Shown: positions 14,300 to 19,050 of the stretch, piece by piece
Layout: the number at the start of each line of letters is the position of its first letter
Position numbering within the stretch: position 1 is the stretch's first letter
Assembly (NCBI GenBank): GCA_023334545.1
Contig: JAADVB010000191.1
Location: 1 to 37,138, forward strand
DNA from: Salisapilia sapeloensis CBS 127946
Lineage: Eukaryota > Protista > Oomycota
DNA: 37,138 nt
Direction: 5' to 3'
Notes under the pieces: model-generated
The model's input: the letters and a program-made list of their open reading frames with translations, nothing else
Told to the model about the DNA's origin: nothing
The model's database searches: none
Position numbers and translations under genes: made by a program

Positions 14300-14589
14300 A
14301 GTCGTAAAGTAGAATGAAGGGACGGGAGGTTTCCACCACCTCTTGACCAAATCTAAAACCGACAAACACATAAGCTCCACACATCATACGCTGAGTTGTA
14401 TTTCAGCTTTCGACAACGCTGCGTGTTCTATCTACCTTCCAACAGAAATGAAAAGAACTTAACAAAGTAGGAAAATCTCATGCCTAAACATGTGCTACAG
14501 GACACTGCTCTAGGACGCGCTCACTCCATCCCTAGTACATACCTCACATTAATATACATATACAAGATACATCAATATACAAGCCAAAC

Positions 14590-17500
14590 TTACATTCGGA
14601 AGGCTTCCGCTAGCTTGTACGAATCAAAGGTCGAGTGGATGCTGACGATCGCACCGTTTGAGATCGTCAGAATGTCACAACTCTCTTCCGTCACGATCTG
14701 GCTGTTCCTCAGAATGCGGAACGTCTGGGATGTCATCACGACCGCTGTCTCCTCGTCTTCGTCAATCACGATCCGCAGCACGCGTCCGCCACTACGCTCT
14801 GCCGTCTCGTCTCGAAGCTTCCAGTACTCACACAAGCGCTTGTACCCATGGAACTCTCCCCAGTACGGCACGCAGTCCGGCAGATTGGAGCTCAAGACAC
14901 ATTCGCTCGAGACAGCATCGATCTTGCCTTCACTCCAGAACGGAGGAGGCGCATCCACTGGCGTCGTGAACTTTAACGACGGGCCGAAAAGGTACTTGTA
15001 GAACTCGACGACGAGCGACTTCATCTCGCCCTTGTTCATGATAATCGAGTTGCTCAGTCCGCTCGAGTCACTGCCGCTACCAGAGCTCAGGCGACCGCTC
15101 AGCGGCGGGTGGGTGCTCTTCAGGTCTTCACCCACGAGAGACGTCCGCTTGGGAGCAGGCGCCCCAACGGCCGCCACGATCTCCGTCAGCCACACTAGTC
15201 GCGTGTCGATCGAGTCCACAAGCACCATGAACGCACCATGTCCTTGCGTATTGATCTGGAAGCCGTAGACGTCTTCCTGTCCAGTAGCCACGAGCGGCAG
15301 TCCTTCCGTAACGTTCACCGGTCGCGCCGTGCCTCGGACAAATGTCCTGTCCTTGGCATGCGTGTCCGTGAGATAGTACGACAAGGATCCTTGCTCCTTA
15401 TCCAGGACAAAGTAGAATCGCTCCCACAACTGCCGCTGCCCAGTCTCGGGGTACTTGCTCTTGTACATGTATCCGGACGTAATAACATTCATCTTATCCT
15501 CGTTCTCCCCATACGACAGCGGCACGTCGTGGACATGCACGCCGCCATCATGCGCTACGAATGCTGCAATGTCATCTCCTTGAGACGTGTCCACCGTCAC
15601 TACTTCGCTATGCTGGCTGCTGCGTCCAGGCGACGCCATGTACGGCTCGTTGGATAGTGCCAGGAGCTTGCTATCAGGCTTAGTACCGCCAGGCGTCGTC
15701 ACGAGACTCTTCCGCAGTCGCTTGAACATCGAGTTCCAGCTACCAAAGGACGATCGGTTCGTTGTCTCTCCGTCCTTCTTATCTGTCGTCGAGCCAGTGG
15801 AGCTCGATCGCTGCGGGAAGCTCGGACGCTCCGGCATCTTGATGACTGAACCGAGACGCATGGGGGTCTTGAAGACAGGAGACTGGAGGACGGTCTTAAA
15901 GTACCCAGACGAGCTGCGTCCACGGTCAGAAGAGCTCTCCTTGGGTTCTTCTTCCTCGTCTTCTACTGGCTGCTCCTCTACCGGTTCGTCCTCTGGGATG
16001 GCAGGTGGCGTCGGGCCTGGATCCGACATGGTGCCTGTCATCTGACGCCAACTGGCGTTGCGTCGACACAAGGACCGGACCTGTGCATTGTTCTGGGATG
16101 GCGTATCGTGCGATAACACTTCATCTAGCGCATCTTTGAGGATGGCAGCGTAGGGACGCAAGGCCGGGACGTCGCTCTTGGCGCGGATGATAATGTCGAC
16201 GACGGACAGGGCAGTGGAGTTCGGCTGCTTCTCCGCTTGGGCCACGACTTGCTCTAGATCTCCGTCATCTCCTTCTTCCGATTCACCAAAGAGGTCTTTC
16301 GTCAACGGACAGTTTCTCGCTCGATTCTCCTCTGCATCTCGAAGGACGTAGGCAACGGCCGGGACGACGTGGATCATCATCATATCAAATGACGGTCGGA
16401 ATAAAAGGACTTGTAGGTACTTTTGCATCAACTTGGCGTCATGCAACGCTTTGTTCACATGTTCGTCGTTGATATAGATGAGAGCGTAGAGGTACTTGGA
16501 TAGAGCAATGCAAACGGAAGGAGGAAGCACTTTACTGTCGACATCCAACTGATCGACGTACGCACTGCTCGTTCCACATGCACACTCGATCACTTTACTC
16601 CACAGCGACCGACCTTTCGAGAGAGAAGCGAGGTTGTACATGGCATTCTCCGCCGTCGAGTCTCGAGGAGACGACGCATAATTGTCTGCATGGGATCCAC
16701 TGAAGCGACTGTATCCAAATGCTGCATCTGCTCGTTCCTCATCACTGTCCGAGTCAGAGGACAGCGTGCGTCCTCGGTCTTTCTTGACTTCCATCTCTTC
16801 CTCGATATCCGAATCACAGTCGGCATAGTGTTTCGACGACAAGACTAAGAGCTCTGTGACGACGTGAATGACTAGTGAATATGAAGCTTCCTTGTCCTTA
16901 TCACTTCGAATGGCCTGTAGTTCCTCGACAGCATTCTCAAACAACAATTCTAGCGAATCCGGGTGCTTACTCAATTCGTCCAAAAGCATGTACTGGAGAA
17001 AGTTGTGATATCCGTGTGTCATGCTTTCAAACCCTCGGATCGTCCCGAATTGATCCCTGACAAAGTACTTGGATAGATAGACACCTCCTTCTCGCCTGCA
17101 AAAGGAACCGAGACGATCTGCTTGATTCGCCTGGAGCATGTCGACGAGTAGACTTGCGCAGTTCTCCACGAGTTCGCTGTTCAGTGGTTTCTTCACATCA
17201 ACTCGTGTGGCCTGGATAAGCAAAGGAGCAACGATCTGCATGGCGTCGTTTCGACCAGTGATCGGATGCACGCTCTCATACGACTGGAGGATGAGCGTTA
17301 GCATGTACTTGACGGTATTCGAGTAGAGGTGAGGAACGACGAGAGGCAAGAGTGGACGCAGGACATTGTCCACGTATCCGTCTTCGAGACAAAAGCCGTC
17401 GTGGAGACGTACGAGCGCTTTACTAAAGAAGAGTAGCTGCATCTCATCTAACGGCGCTTTGGCTTCAAACAACGAGTAGAGCAACTTCCACTTGCCAATG

Positions 17501-18222
17501 TCTGCTGGTTCGAGACAACCAAAGACGGCCGAGGTGGTCGAGTGGGAACCGGCCGAGCTGTCGGAGGAAAAGGACTCGTACAGATCGTCATCTCCGGTAT
17601 AGAGTTTCATGATAATTTCAGAGCAAATAAAGTGGCGTTTGTAGTACCCATACTCTTCATGCGGTTCTCCTTCAAAGACAGGAGGCGCGATGAACGCACG
17701 CAGGACGTCTTCCACGACTTCTGGCATTAATAACCACAGACGAATGTCCGAGTCGGAATCTTCCAAGACCTCGAGGATCGGATCTATGCCCATCTGTAGG
17801 AAATAGTCGAGCGATAGTTTCTCCTGTTGGCCAGAAGAAGATAGGAACGCATCGTCGCCATAGGCGGGAAGAGACCGTCGTCGGAAGGTGTCGGCATCAT
17901 CGACGAACTTGGACAAGCTGCCAGAACGTCCAGATCGACTGGCAAGCACTTCCATCTCGTTCACTGAAAATGTCAGCGTCGGGGGAACGGATGGACCTTG
18001 CGACGGCGATCGAGAGGGAGAGTGCTCTGCTTCCGTCACGTCCGCCGCCGGATCCGTCTCAGACGAGCTAGTCTGCGCATGATCCTCGTGGATCGAGGTG
18101 AGCTGGTCCGTGTCGACGGGGGGAGGTCGCGCTGCATCCTGTGTCGCGTCACTGTCTCCATTTGCATTAGATATCTCGGCCACAGGGTCTGTCTGCGGCG
18201 GCACTGGCGGTGGGTCTTCCAT
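14590..18222 (-). CDS. Multidomain protein: SAPS (PP6/Sit4 regulatory subunit)-like domain + PH domain + C-terminal SnoaL/NTF2-like domain (~1210 aa)
   Basis: SAPS-like LLMPEVVEDVL..PP...YK..ICSEI and LDEMQLLFFSKAL. PH GYMYK..QLWERFYFVL...YGFQI...TRLVWLTEI. SnoaL-like VPYWGEFHG...ISNGAIVSIHSTFDSYKLAEAF. The ORF is open from ATG 18456, but a likely 61-nt intron (18236-18296) favours the start at 18222. Confidence 0.7.
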   Translation of the reverse strand: MEDPPPVPPQTDPVAEISNANGDSDATQDAARPPPVDTDQLTSIHEDHAQTSSSETDPAADVTEAEHSPSRSPSQGPSVPPTLTFSVNEMEVLASRSGRSGSLSKFVDDADTFRRRSLPAYGDDAFLSSSGQQEKLSLDYFLQMGIDPILEVLEDSDSDIRLWLLMPEVVEDVLRAFIAPPVFEGEPHEEYGYYKRHFICSEIIMKLYTGDDDLYESFSSDSSAGSHSTTSAVFGCLEPADIGKWKLLYSLFEAKAPLDEMQLLFFSKALVRLHDGFCLEDGYVDNVLRPLLPLVVPHLYSNTVKYMLTLILQSYESVHPITGRNDAMQIVAPLLIQATRVDVKKPLNSELVENCASLLVDMLQANQADRLGSFCRREGGVYLSKYFVRDQFGTIRGFESMTHGYHNFLQYMLLDELSKHPDSLELLFENAVEELQAIRSDKDKEASYSLVIHVVTELLVLSSKHYADCDSDIEEEMEVKKDRGRTLSSDSDSDEERADAAFGYSRFSGSHADNYASSPRDSTAENAMYNLASLSKGRSLWSKVIECACGTSSAYVDQLDVDSKVLPPSVCIALSKYLYALIYINDEHVNKALHDAKLMQKYLQVLLFRPSFDMMMIHVVPAVAYVLRDAEENRARNCPLTKDLFGESEEGDDGDLEQVVAQAEKQPNSTALSVVDIIIRAKSDVPALRPYAAILKDALDEVLSHDTPSQNNAQVRSLCRRNASWRQMTGTMSDPGPTPPAIPEDEPVEEQPVEDEEEEPKESSSDRGRSSSGYFKTVLQSPVFKTPMRLGSVIKMPERPSFPQRSSSTGSTTDKKDGETTNRSSFGSWNSMFKRLRKSLVTTPGGTKPDSKLLALSNEPYMASPGRSSQHSEVVTVDTSQGDDIAAFVAHDGGVHVHDVPLSYGENEDKMNVITSGYMYKSKYPETGQRQLWERFYFVLDKEQGSLSYYLTDTHAKDRTFVRGTARPVNVTEGLPLVATGQEDVYGFQINTQGHGAFMVLVDSIDTRLVWLTEIVAAVGAPAPKRTSLVGEDLKSTHPPLSGRLSSGSGSDSSGLSNSIIMNKGEMKSLVVEFYKYLFGPSLKFTTPVDAPPPFWSEGKIDAVSSECVLSSNLPDCVPYWGEFHGYKRLCEYWKLRDETAERSGGRVLRIVIDEDEETAVVMTSQTFRILRNSQIVTEESCDILTISNGAIVSIHSTFDSYKLAEAFRM

Positions 18223-19050
18223 GATACTGTAAAACCTATAAACATTTTCGTAGGTATGCAATGCATCGTTTGGATAGGAAGATGCTTGCAATGTACCTGT
18301 GATTTGTGGCGGGAGAAAAGGAGGATTGCGTCTTGTGTCCTTCGTGCCACCTTTGCCAAGTCCCGTTCTCTGCCCCCCTTCGCTCTTACCGTAGGTGGCT
18401 CTAAATGACGTGGTTTTTGTATGTAGACCAATGACGACAGAAGGGGAAGGGGCCATCGAGGATTATGGCCAATGGCGACATTGCTGTGCCATTGCCCTGG
18501 TTTCCCGAGCTGAACGCCACGCTTGACTGTAGCTCTCGGCGACATGGAAGCAATTCAAGTTAGTGGAGACTTTACTTAGCATGAGCAGTAAGAGACAGAG
18601 TTATTGGTTGGCTTGATTGCATGTCTCCAGATGAGATAGAGCATGCATGGTTGATCCTAGTATCGATGGCTCTAGCTCCTTTTCCGATGTCCATCATGAT
18701 CTTTACGCTTCCATAGTCATTTGTATCTACAATCACTCGGGTTCTACCACCCTCCATGCCTTATCACTTTACTATCCTGGCTTCTTGTGCACCCATTCTG
18801 TGCCAACTGGGATATACAACGCAGCTTTATGAGTAATACGATAGACATGACCATCTTCTTGGAGCAACCCAACGTTATGTGCACAATGGCTTCTCCATTT
18901 GACGTCCCCATGAAGCTCTACGCCATGACAACGTTTCTTCCATCGTGTCCACGACAACTTCAACTGGACTACAACCCGACAAACGCGCGTATCGCGGTGA
19001 CTTATGTGGGACGAGCCCTTTACCCAAAACAAGATGTCCTACAGACGACG

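What the first reader, a model, noticed from the sequence alone, without database searches (positions are those of the whole stretch)
14590..18222. Novel-looking fusion: PP6/Sit4 regulatory SAPS domain + PH domain + bacterial-type SnoaL/NTF2 domain
The SAPS-like motifs (LL..E..ED....PP....YK...I.E and L.....FFSK.L) are clear but diverged. Canonical SAPS/PPP6R proteins end in an acidic disordered tail, whereas this one continues into a PH domain (~15190-15480). It ends in a ~140-aa domain (14590-~15020) resembling bacterial ketosteroid-isomerase-related SnoaL proteins (VP.xG.F.G ... +T+.NG.I......D+..L..AF). Inference: a phosphatase scaffold targeted to membranes by PH and gated by a small hydrophobic ligand in the NTF2 pocket. 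The 3.6-kb CDS is intronless and looks GC-richer than its neighbours. I know of no description of this architecture.
Basis: partly seen in the sequence, partly recalled or inferred. Interest (0 to 1): 0.72.

Follow-up and report, generated by a model that had tools for sequence, protein, structure and literature searches.

The report
Oomycete SAPS-like, PH, NTF2 scaffold protein
This is a real, expressed gene found in every oomycete order sampled here (water moulds and the Phytophthora group): its protein joins a very diverged copy of the helical domain that normally steers protein phosphatase 6 to a PH domain and a ketosteroid-isomerase-like NTF2 domain, an unstudied combination whose function is inferred, not shown.

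Summary
The gene (minus strand) is transcribed and spliced. It is not intronless: there is a 61-nt intron in the 5' UTR (18236-18296) and a 62-nt intron in the CDS (14532-14593). A 22-nt last exon gives a 1216-aa protein ending MDGVSAS, like its orthologs.

- **Orthologs:** found in Peronosporales, Pythiales, Albuginales and Saprolegniales at 35-61% identity.
- **C-terminal domain:** a firm NTF2/SnoaL_2/KSI-like fold (Z 16.9, rmsd 2.0 Å to KSI 7epn).
- **PH domain:** supported by Pfam in 18 of 18 orthologs.
- **N-terminal solenoid:** gives no direct Pfam SAPS hit, but four lines tie it to SAPS:
  - an exhaustive profile search finds only an oomycete ankyrin-SAPS paralog family, several members of which pass Pfam's SAPS cut-off;
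  - hhalign between the two families gives 98.7%, E 2e-16, over 491 columns;
  - the first-listed Atlas fold match is PPP6R3;
  - 26 of 30 language-model neighbours are SAPS clusters.

'Bacterial-type' origin, PH-driven membrane targeting and ligand gating are unsupported. Databases already list orthologs as PH (one as PH + NTF2-like) proteins; the SAPS link is unannotated and no paper was found. This scan had already found the ankyrin-SAPS paralog on other DNA of this genome. Verdict: new variant of a known kind, moderate interest.

The parts
18297..18409 (-). 5' UTR exon 1. The 5' end is approximate: the contigs end at 18355, 18392 and 18409.
   Evidence: Transcript contigs of runs X1, X2 and X5.
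18236..18296 (-). Intron 1, 61 nt, GT..AG, in the 5' UTR.
   Evidence: Joint 18233/18295 (cut +2) in contigs of X1, X2 and X5. Sequence GTACAT...TTATAG.
14594..18235 (-). Exon 2. The start codon ATG is at 18220-18222. It encodes residues 1-1209 and two bases of codon 1210.
   Evidence: ORF list and translation. In-frame stop upstream in the spliced mRNA. Contigs cover it fully with no differences in X1 and X2.
17869..17931 (-). Invariant basophilic Ser motifs (R.GSLS ... RR.S) in the disordered N-terminal region, residues 98-118. These are candidate phosphorylation sites (inference).
   Evidence: Invariant columns R99 G101 S102 L103 S104 R114 R115 S117. pLDDT below 50.
16033..17811 (-). SAPS-like all-alpha helical-repeat domain, residues about 138-730.
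   Evidence: AF2 model with pTM 0.72. The first-listed Atlas fold match is PPP6R3/SAPS, TM 0.54 over 455 residues. Profile hits to SAPS-bearing proteins. hhalign 98.7%, E 2e-16. 26 of 30 pLM neighbours are SAPS.
16981..17136 (-). The most conserved block of the family, residues 363-414 (LQANQADRLG ... YFVRDQFGTIRGFE ... GYHNFLQ). Most of it (residues 368-405) is modelled only at low confidence, as a beta-hairpin insert in the solenoid. It is a likely partner-binding element (inference).
   Evidence: Run of invariant columns 363-414. Low pLDDT at model residues 293-330, with strands 308-314 and 320-326.
15493..16032 (-). Disordered acidic and Ser-rich linker, residues 731-910, with short conserved basic motifs (SPVFK.PMRLGSVIK; FG.WNS.FKRLRKSLV).
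   Evidence: Alignment. No Pfam family apart from one chance-level hit (DUF5986, E 1.1).
15166..15492 (-). PH domain, residues 911-1019.
   Evidence: Pfam PH at E 5.4e-4 on the domain alone. 18 of 18 orthologs match, best 1.3e-6. The AF2 model shows a strand array plus a C-terminal helix carrying invariant W1011.
14594..15045 (-). NTF2-like (SnoaL_2 / ketosteroid-isomerase-like) domain, residues 1060-1209.
   Evidence: Pfam SnoaL_2 at E 0.043 here, and in 9 of 18 orthologs, best 6e-6. Foldseek PDB E 5e-6. VIA Z 16.9, rmsd 2.0 Å, 129 of 133 residues of KSI 7epn_A.
14532..14593 (-). Intron 2, 62 nt, GT..AG, inside the CDS.
   Evidence: Joint 14530/14593 (cut +1) in contigs of X1, X2, X5 and X6. 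Sequence.
14510..14531 (-). Last coding exon: the last base of codon 1210, then DGVSAS and stop TAG (14510-14512). The 3' UTR continues to at least 14400.
   Evidence: Sequence. Orthologs end in EGISAS, GLDAS or GLDGS. Spliced contigs. Frame check gives 3651 nt = 1216 codons plus stop.

Best explanation
The gene encodes a 1216-residue cytosolic scaffold found only in oomycetes in these searches and present in every oomycete order sampled here. Its domain order is:
1. a disordered N-terminus with invariant RxGSLS / RRxS motifs;
2. a roughly 600-residue, very diverged SAPS-family helical-repeat domain;
3. a disordered acidic/Ser-rich linker;
4. a PH domain;
5. an NTF2-like (SnoaL_2/KSI-like) domain;
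6. a conserved short tail encoded by a mini-exon.

**Shown:** the gene model, expression and splicing, conservation, purifying selection, the three folds, and homology of the N-domain to a second oomycete family (PA + ankyrin + SAPS) that passes Pfam's SAPS threshold.

**Inferred:** as in Sit4/PP6 holoenzymes, the solenoid recruits a PP6-type catalytic subunit. The PH-NTF2 module then supplies localisation, partner binding or oligomerisation that decides which substrates are dephosphorylated. The N-terminal basophilic Ser sites and the invariant hairpin block are the likely regulatory and partner-binding elements.
For: - **Gene and expression:** 3.85-3.9 kb contigs in four runs carry one or both GT..AG splices. 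Contigs of X1 and X2 are identical to the window. A roughly 95%-identical relative (X5, X6) keeps the splicing and the frame; its only indel is 3 nt, and by my count 32 of the 36 listed CDS substitutions fall on third codon positions.
- **Conservation:** 39 homologs across Peronosporales, Pythiales, Albuginales and Saprolegniales, with many invariant columns.
- **SAPS link:**
  - An exhaustive HMM search of 1.84 billion representatives gave only 24 hits. The six distant ones (E 2e-8 to 1.6e-4) all carry Pfam SAPS on the same stretch.
  - Several family members exceed the gathering score of 25.6: 31.7, 40.7, 34.7 and 32.6 bits.
  - The hits are collinear two-part matches.
  - hhalign gives 98.7%, E 2.1e-16, over 491 columns.
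  - The first-listed Atlas fold match is PPP6R3 (SAPS in 100% of members), TM 0.54 over 455 residues.
  - 26 of 30 named pLM neighbours are SAPS clusters at 0.95.
  - There are weak direct SAPS hits in 3 of 18 orthologs, one on SAPS model positions 24-89, which is collinear.
- **Rosetta-stone argument:** the paralog fuses ankyrin repeats to the same domain, mirroring the SAPS-Ankrd-PP6c heterotrimer (PMC5473023).
- **PH and NTF2:**
Against: - The protein itself gives no Pfam SAPS hit even at E 10.
- No solved SAPS structure was available for comparison. PDB matches are generic ARM/HEAT solenoids, among which B56 and many others score alike.
- I could not align the N-domain to canonical PPP6R/Sap sequences. 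The acidic loop residues that matter for PP6c binding in PP6R3 (E204/205, E259/262; PMC2765987) are therefore untested.
- The family-specific invariant hairpin block has no counterpart in the paralog alignment, so partner specificity may have changed.
- The PH domain lacks the canonical phosphoinositide signature.
- Nothing here shows binding to any phosphatase.
Confidence: 0.55

Rival explanations
1. The solenoid descends from SAPS but no longer binds a phosphatase. The protein would then be a general ARM/HEAT-type adaptor (for example in trafficking or the cytoskeleton), with specificity residing in the invariant hairpin block and the PH-NTF2 module.
For: Extreme divergence from Pfam SAPS. 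The most conserved block is family-specific and is not matched in the paralog. Structural neighbours include many unrelated solenoid adaptors with similar scores.
Against: The whole domain stays collinear with the SAPS-positive paralog family over 491 columns. PPP6R3 is the first-listed fold match in the Atlas and SAPS dominates the pLM neighbours.
Confidence: 0.27
2. The NTF2-like domain is an enzyme or a small-molecule sensor (KSI/SnoaL/limonene-epoxide-hydrolase type) and is the business end of the protein. The rest localises or regulates it, much as the reader's 'ligand-gated' idea proposed.
For: The best structural matches are enzymes and ligand binders of this fold: KSI at Z 16.9, TerC, LEH and polyketide cyclases. 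The domain is the most conserved part (76% mean column identity), with invariant polar residues Y, W, H, D, E, R, N and C.
Against: NTF2-like domains fused to eukaryotic signalling proteins often serve as protein-binding or oligomerisation modules (general knowledge). No catalytic constellation was tested. Identity to any enzyme is at most 19%.
Confidence: 0.13
3. The C-terminal SnoaL-like domain was acquired by horizontal transfer from bacteria and fused to a host SAPS-PH gene.
For: Pfam SnoaL_2 and nearly all solved structural neighbours are bacterial. GC3 of this segment is the highest in the gene, at 0.74.
Against: A profile search with the domain found only oomycete sequences and no bacterial relative at E up to 1. 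The domain is present in all oomycete orders sampled. The PDB is biased towards bacteria. Two native neighbouring genes have a GC3 as high as this gene's overall value.
Confidence: 0.05

Closest known systems
SAPS-domain PP6/Sit4 regulatory subunits (human PPP6R1-3, yeast Sap4/155/185/190; Pfam PF04499)
   Same: A long all-alpha helical-repeat domain followed by an acidic disordered stretch. PPP6R3 is the first-listed fold match in the Atlas and SAPS dominates the pLM neighbours. Homology is traced through a SAPS-positive intermediate family.
   Different: There is no direct Pfam match. A family-specific invariant hairpin block is inserted in the solenoid. The disordered tail is followed by PH and NTF2-like domains. 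PP6c binding is untested.
Oomycete PA-ankyrin-SAPS proteins (for example Phytophthora infestans 'SIT4 phosphatase-associated domain-containing protein'; Aphanomyces astaci H257_17791)
   Same: The closest relative of the N-domain: E 2e-16 over 491 columns. Both families were found only in oomycetes and unattributed metagenome or run assemblies. My own profile comparison for that point was weak (E 0.006, probability 6%).
   Different: The paralog has PA and ankyrin domains at the N-terminus and a disordered C-terminal tail with no NTF2-like domain. It passes the Pfam SAPS threshold; this protein does not.
SnoaL_2 / ketosteroid-isomerase-like NTF2 proteins (for example KSI 7epn, Bxe_B1094 3fgy, Bal32a 1tuh)
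   Same: The same alpha+beta cone fold across the whole domain: Z 15-17, rmsd about 2 Å, about 130 residues.
   Different: Those are stand-alone bacterial proteins of about 130 aa. Here the domain is the C-terminal module of a 1216-aa eukaryotic scaffold, identity is 10-19%, and no close sequence relative exists outside oomycetes.

Membership tests
SAPS (PF04499, PP6/Sit4 regulatory subunits) | Match to the Pfam SAPS profile at or above the gathering score (25.6 bits) | tested here: not met
   There is no hit for the window protein or its N-domain even at E 10. Only 3 of 18 orthologs hit, with best E 0.027.
SAPS (PF04499, PP6/Sit4 regulatory subunits) | Homology to bona fide SAPS-positive proteins over the domain (intermediate-sequence / profile-profile test) | tested here: met
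   The A2 profile hits six proteins that all carry Pfam SAPS on the same stretch, several above the cut-off. hhalign gives 98.7%, E 2.1e-16, over 491 columns. The intermediates match only SAPS model positions about 314-451.
SAPS (PF04499, PP6/Sit4 regulatory subunits) | Helical-repeat fold like PPP6R | tested here: met
   The first row of the Atlas shape search is PPP6R3 (SAPS in 100% of members), TM 0.54 by query over 455 aligned residues. One unnamed ciliate cluster has a higher TM (0.59). No solved SAPS structure turned up for a direct test.
SAPS (PF04499, PP6/Sit4 regulatory subunits) | Binds the PP6/Sit4 catalytic subunit, with acidic loop residues contributing (PMC2765987) | not testable with these tools
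   This needs co-precipitation or complex modelling. I had no canonical SAPS sequence from a tool to map E204/205 and E259/262.
PH domain (PF00169) | Pfam PH profile match | tested here: inconclusive
   The window scores 20.9 bits on the domain alone and 16.5 on the whole protein, against a cut-off of 25.1. All 18 orthologs match, best E 1.3e-6, and four carry a precomputed PF00169 hit.
PH domain (PF00169) | Beta-sandwich capped by a C-terminal helix with a conserved Trp | tested here: met
   The AF2 model has strands at 33-43, 56-63, 68-72, 86-95, 106-115 and 119-124 and a helix at 127-141, with pLDDT 70-84. W1011 is invariant. The fold-search lists were filled by the NTF2 domain, so there is no PDB match for this part.
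PH domain (PF00169) | Phosphoinositide-binding signature K-Xn-[KR]-X-R across strands 1 and 2 | tested here: not met
   By my inspection, strand 2 reads W-E-R-[FY]-Y-F in all orthologs, so the two pocket positions are Glu and Phe/Tyr. Basic residues remain in the strand 1-2 loop, so non-canonical binding is not excluded.
NTF2-like superfamily, SnoaL_2 (PF12680) / KSI-like | Alpha+beta cone fold over the whole domain | tested here: met
   VIA gives Z 16.9, rmsd 2.0 Å, 129 of 133 residues (7epn_A), and 50 rows at Z 12 or above are all of this fold. Foldseek gives E 5e-6 and TM by target 0.66-0.72. pLDDT is 88-95.
NTF2-like superfamily, SnoaL_2 (PF12680) / KSI-like | Pfam SnoaL_2 profile match (cut-off 27 bits) | tested here: inconclusive
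   The window scores 14.9 bits, E 0.043. 9 of 18 orthologs match, best 6e-6, and two Aphanomyces orthologs carry a precomputed PF12680 hit.
NTF2-like superfamily, SnoaL_2 (PF12680) / KSI-like | Catalytic residues of KSI, SnoaL or LEH in the pocket | not tested

The most novel reading that the evidence does not exclude
Oomycetes have built their own set of phosphatase-6 regulators by fusing a diverged SAPS domain to PH-type and other modules. In this member the KSI-like NTF2 pocket would bind a hydrophobic small molecule (a sterol or lipid is the obvious candidate in organisms many of which depend on external sterols), so that ligand occupancy controls where or when the phosphatase acts.
Probability: 0.07. 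Interest if true: 0.8.

Novelty: new variant of a known kind. Interest (0 to 1): 0.45.

Why it matters
PP6/Sit4 regulators are known as SAPS proteins with unstructured tails, plus separate ankyrin subunits in vertebrates. Oomycetes, which include major crop and fish pathogens, appear to have at least two lineage-specific SAPS-derived scaffolds with extra domains. One is fused to ankyrin repeats. This one is fused to PH and NTF2-like domains.

If they do bind PP6c, they would show a different way of giving a PPP phosphatase its specificity. Because no relatives were found outside oomycetes, they would also be lineage-specific handles for studying oomycete signalling. The finding also flags that current annotations ('PH domain-containing protein', 'hypothetical protein') miss the SAPS relationship.

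Tried and rejected
- **Direct Pfam scans** of the whole protein and of four pieces found no SAPS.
- **PDB sequence searches** found no SAPS relative or structure: the protein, the N-domain profile and the paralog profile gave nothing.
- **Thioredoxin hits:** the C-terminal profile gave only weak thioredoxin hits (E 0.005). I reject these as a chance W.E..G motif match, because the fold is clearly NTF2-like.
- **Foldseek and VIA against PDB** for the N-domain gave only generic ARM/HEAT repeats.
- **The whole-protein Atlas feature search** gave no usable hit.
- **Fetching canonical SAPS sequences** with the paralog profile failed; only the oomycete family came back. No direct hhalign against PPP6R/Sap proteins could therefore be run.
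- **A shared PH domain between the two oomycete families** was not settled: hhalign was weak (E 0.001-0.006, probability 6-22%).
- **Bacterial origin of the NTF2 domain:** no bacterial relatives were found.
- **The N-extended protein from ATG 18456** is rejected. The main contigs do not reach it, and splicing puts it out of frame, making it a 119-codon overlapping uORF at most.
- **Literature searches** found nothing on this protein.
Full report
**Gene model.** The window holds a minus-strand ORF at 14590-18456.

I laid public run contigs on 14400-18600. Contigs of 3853, 3909 and 3889 nt from three runs cover the gene, and a fourth run (X6) covers it in pieces. There are two joints: one skips 62 nt (14532-14593) in all four runs, and one skips 61 nt (18236-18296) in three. 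Both are GT..AG on the minus strand. The runs are only guessed to be RNA in their records. Gene-sized contigs that lack canonical introns show they are transcript assemblies.

The contigs end at 18355-18409, so the ATG at 18456 lies outside the main transcript. A separate low-depth 196-nt contig does cover 18414-18600. In the spliced mRNA the frame of ATG 18222 has a stop 35 codons upstream and no earlier in-frame ATG.

The 3' intron lies inside the CDS. A 22-nt last exon (14510-14531) completes the protein as ...AFRMDGVSAS, matching the EGISAS, GLDAS and GLDGS ends of orthologs. The CDS is 3651 nt, giving 1216 aa.

All database and fold searches used exon 2 by reference (window:14593-18222:- or parts of it). 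The joined product was never sent to a search tool. I joined the exons only in local scripts, to check frame, length and GC. The seven residues of the last exon were compared with orthologs by eye.

**Reality and conservation.** Runs X1 and X2 match the window exactly. Runs X5 and X6 come from a second organism and differ at about 4.5% of positions. They keep both splice joints where covered, and their only indel is an in-frame 3-nt deletion. By my count, 32 of the 36 listed substitutions inside the CDS fall on third codon positions. That is purifying selection.

The word-based protein search returned 39 homologs at 35-61% identity from Phytophthora, Peronospora, Plasmopara, Bremia, Hyaloperonospora, Pythium, Globisporangium, Lagenidium, Albugo, Aphanomyces, Saprolegnia, Achlya and Thraustotheca. 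Most are named 'PH domain-containing protein' or 'hypothetical protein'. The Plasmopara entry is named 'pleckstrin domain, PH-like domain superfamily, NTF2-like domain superfamily'. An 18-sequence alignment shows long runs of invariant columns in three regions separated by variable, gap-rich linkers.

**C-terminal domains.** Pfam gives PH at E 5.4e-4 and SnoaL_2 at E 0.043 on the isolated pieces, both below the gathering scores. Across orthologs, PH matches 18 of 18 (best 1.3e-6) and SnoaL_2 matches 9 of 18 (best 6e-6).

The AF2 model of residues 879-1210 (mean pLDDT 75) shows three parts:
- a beta-strand array with a C-terminal helix (the PH domain);
- a disordered 36-residue linker;
- an alpha+beta cone with pLDDT 88-95.

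The cone matches KSI/SnoaL/LEH-type NTF2 proteins over its whole length. Foldseek gives E 5e-6 and TM by target 0.66-0.72. VIA gives Z 16.9, rmsd 2.0 Å, 129 of 133 residues of 7epn_A, and fifty rows at Z 12 or above all have this fold. A weak thioredoxin hit by sequence is therefore chance.

A profile search with the NTF2 domain, restricted to proteins of similar length, found only five oomycete-type fragments and no bacterial protein. 'Bacterial-type' therefore describes only where the superfamily is best sampled.

Strand 2 of the PH domain reads W-E-R-F/Y-Y-F in every ortholog. The two positions that carry [KR]-x-R in phosphoinositide-binding PH domains are thus Glu and an aromatic residue. 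This comes from my inspection and general knowledge, not from a tool test. Membrane targeting by this domain is therefore unproven.

**N-terminal domain.** Pfam finds no SAPS in this protein, and PDB sequence searches find nothing. The AF2 model of residues 76-730 (pTM 0.72) is an all-alpha solenoid with three disordered inserts. Four independent lines nevertheless tie it to SAPS.

1. *Exhaustive profile search.* An HMM search of 1.84 billion representatives with the N-domain profile returned only 24 proteins. Eighteen are orthologs or fragments. Six distant hits (E 2e-8 to 1.6e-4) all carry Pfam SAPS on the very stretch matched. Among the family members scanned, four exceed the 25.6-bit cut-off (31.7, 40.7, 34.7 and 32.6 bits).
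2. *Profile-profile comparison.* hhalign of the ortholog alignment against the SAPS region of these proteins gives probability 98.7%, E 2.1e-16, over 491 aligned columns.
3. *Shape search.* The first row of the Atlas shape search is the PPP6R3 cluster (SAPS in 100% of members), TM 0.54 by query over 455 residues. It is listed ahead of AP-5 zeta, condensin, integrator and other solenoids, although one unnamed ciliate cluster has a higher TM (0.59).
4. *Language-model features.* 26 of 30 named neighbours by language-model features are SAPS clusters at 0.95.

One Saprolegnia ortholog also gives a weak direct hit to SAPS model positions 24-89, collinear with the rest. PDB fold searches give only generic ARM/HEAT repeats, and no solved SAPS domain turned up. 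I conclude that the domain is a highly diverged member of the SAPS superfamily (about 85%).

**The paralog family.** The named intermediates come from Phytophthora and Aphanomyces. The rest are unattributed metagenome or run-assembly sequences. They have PA + ankyrin repeats + SAPS-like domain + a further conserved region + a disordered tail. Some are named 'SIT4 phosphatase-associated domain-containing protein', and one is named 'PH domain-containing protein'.

PP6 works with SAPS subunits and, in vertebrates, with ankyrin-repeat subunits (PMC5473023). An ankyrin-SAPS fusion in the same organisms is therefore a Rosetta-stone hint that these diverged SAPS domains still operate in a PP6 context.

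This scan had already reported that paralog in another piece of this genome (s1-296286). I reached it independently through the profile search. An unchecked note (s1-307830) mentions a third SAPS-plus-PH gene. My attempt to show that the PH domains of the two families are homologous was inconclusive. The paralog has no NTF2-like domain.

**Mechanism.** Shown: the architecture, expression and conservation. Inferred: the solenoid recruits a PP6-type catalytic subunit, and the PH-NTF2 module sets location, partners or oligomeric state.

In PP6R3, residues 1-513 are needed for PP6c binding and acidic loop residues contribute (PMC2765987). I could not map these residues because no canonical SAPS sequence was obtainable from the tools.

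Two features deserve attention:
- **Invariant block, residues 363-414** (16981-17136). Most of it is modelled only at low confidence, as a hairpin insert, and it is not matched in the paralog. It is probably a partner-binding element.
- **Invariant RxGSLS and RRxS motifs** in the disordered N-terminus (17869-17931). These look like basophilic-kinase sites (inference).

**Composition.** The CDS has GC 0.545 and GC3 0.636. Ten neighbouring ORFs span GC 0.46-0.545 and GC3 0.45-0.65. The gene sits at the top of the local range but is not an outlier. Given its presence in all oomycete orders sampled, there is no case for recent transfer.

**Novelty.** The protein family and its PH/NTF2 annotation are already in public databases. 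The SAPS relationship of its N-terminal domain is not annotated there, and full-text searches found no paper on it. I rate it a new variant of a known kind: a SAPS-family scaffold with a lineage-specific PH + NTF2 extension. Interest is moderate because every functional statement is still inference.

Noticed in passing
window 18236-18456: The 61-nt intron in the 5' UTR is spliced out in contigs of three runs. The ATG at 18456 lies beyond the ends of the main contigs (18355-18409). If a longer transcript existed, splicing would make that ATG start a 119-codon out-of-frame uORF that overlaps the main start and stops near 18038. A separate 196-nt low-depth contig does cover 18414-18600.
   Followed up: partly
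P0055, P0059, P0084, P0088-P0100 (Phytophthora, Aphanomyces and unattributed metagenome proteins): A second oomycete family carries PA + ankyrin repeats + a diverged SAPS domain + a conserved PH-like region + a disordered tail. It is a single-chain counterpart of the SAPS-plus-ankyrin subunits of PP6. Pfam SAPS covers only model positions 314-451 in these proteins.
   Followed up: partly
orthologs P0002, P0006, P0020, P0025, P0026 (C-terminal ends, alignment A1 columns 1795-1857): Several deposited ortholog models end differently (for example KKYA, RKYVLLSN, or long odd tails) instead of the conserved ...EGISAS. They probably read through the small 3' intron that this window shows to be spliced. 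P0003 and P0028 (1898 aa, carrying unrelated Pfam domains) look like fusions with a neighbouring gene. P0012 is named 'cmgc mapk protein kinase' although it belongs to this family and carries no precomputed Pfam domain.
   Followed up: no
window 15493-16032 (residues 731-910): Within the disordered linker, two short basic motifs are conserved outside Saprolegniales: YFK.VLQSPVFK.PMRLGSVIK and FG.WNS.FKRLRKSLV. They might be amphipathic or basic membrane- or partner-binding elements. Their role is unexplained.
   Followed up: no
window 16268: The roughly 95%-identical relative seen in runs X5 and X6 has a 3-nt in-frame deletion here, in the variable region after the solenoid. The change is allelic or species-level and keeps the frame.
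   Followed up: no
Saprolegniales orthologs P0033-P0038, alignment A1 columns about 390-500: Saprolegniales carry an insert of roughly 100 residues, Pro/Ser/Thr-rich, just before the invariant EEYGYYK motif. It is absent from the Peronosporales, Pythiales and Albugo sequences and from this window.
   Followed up: no
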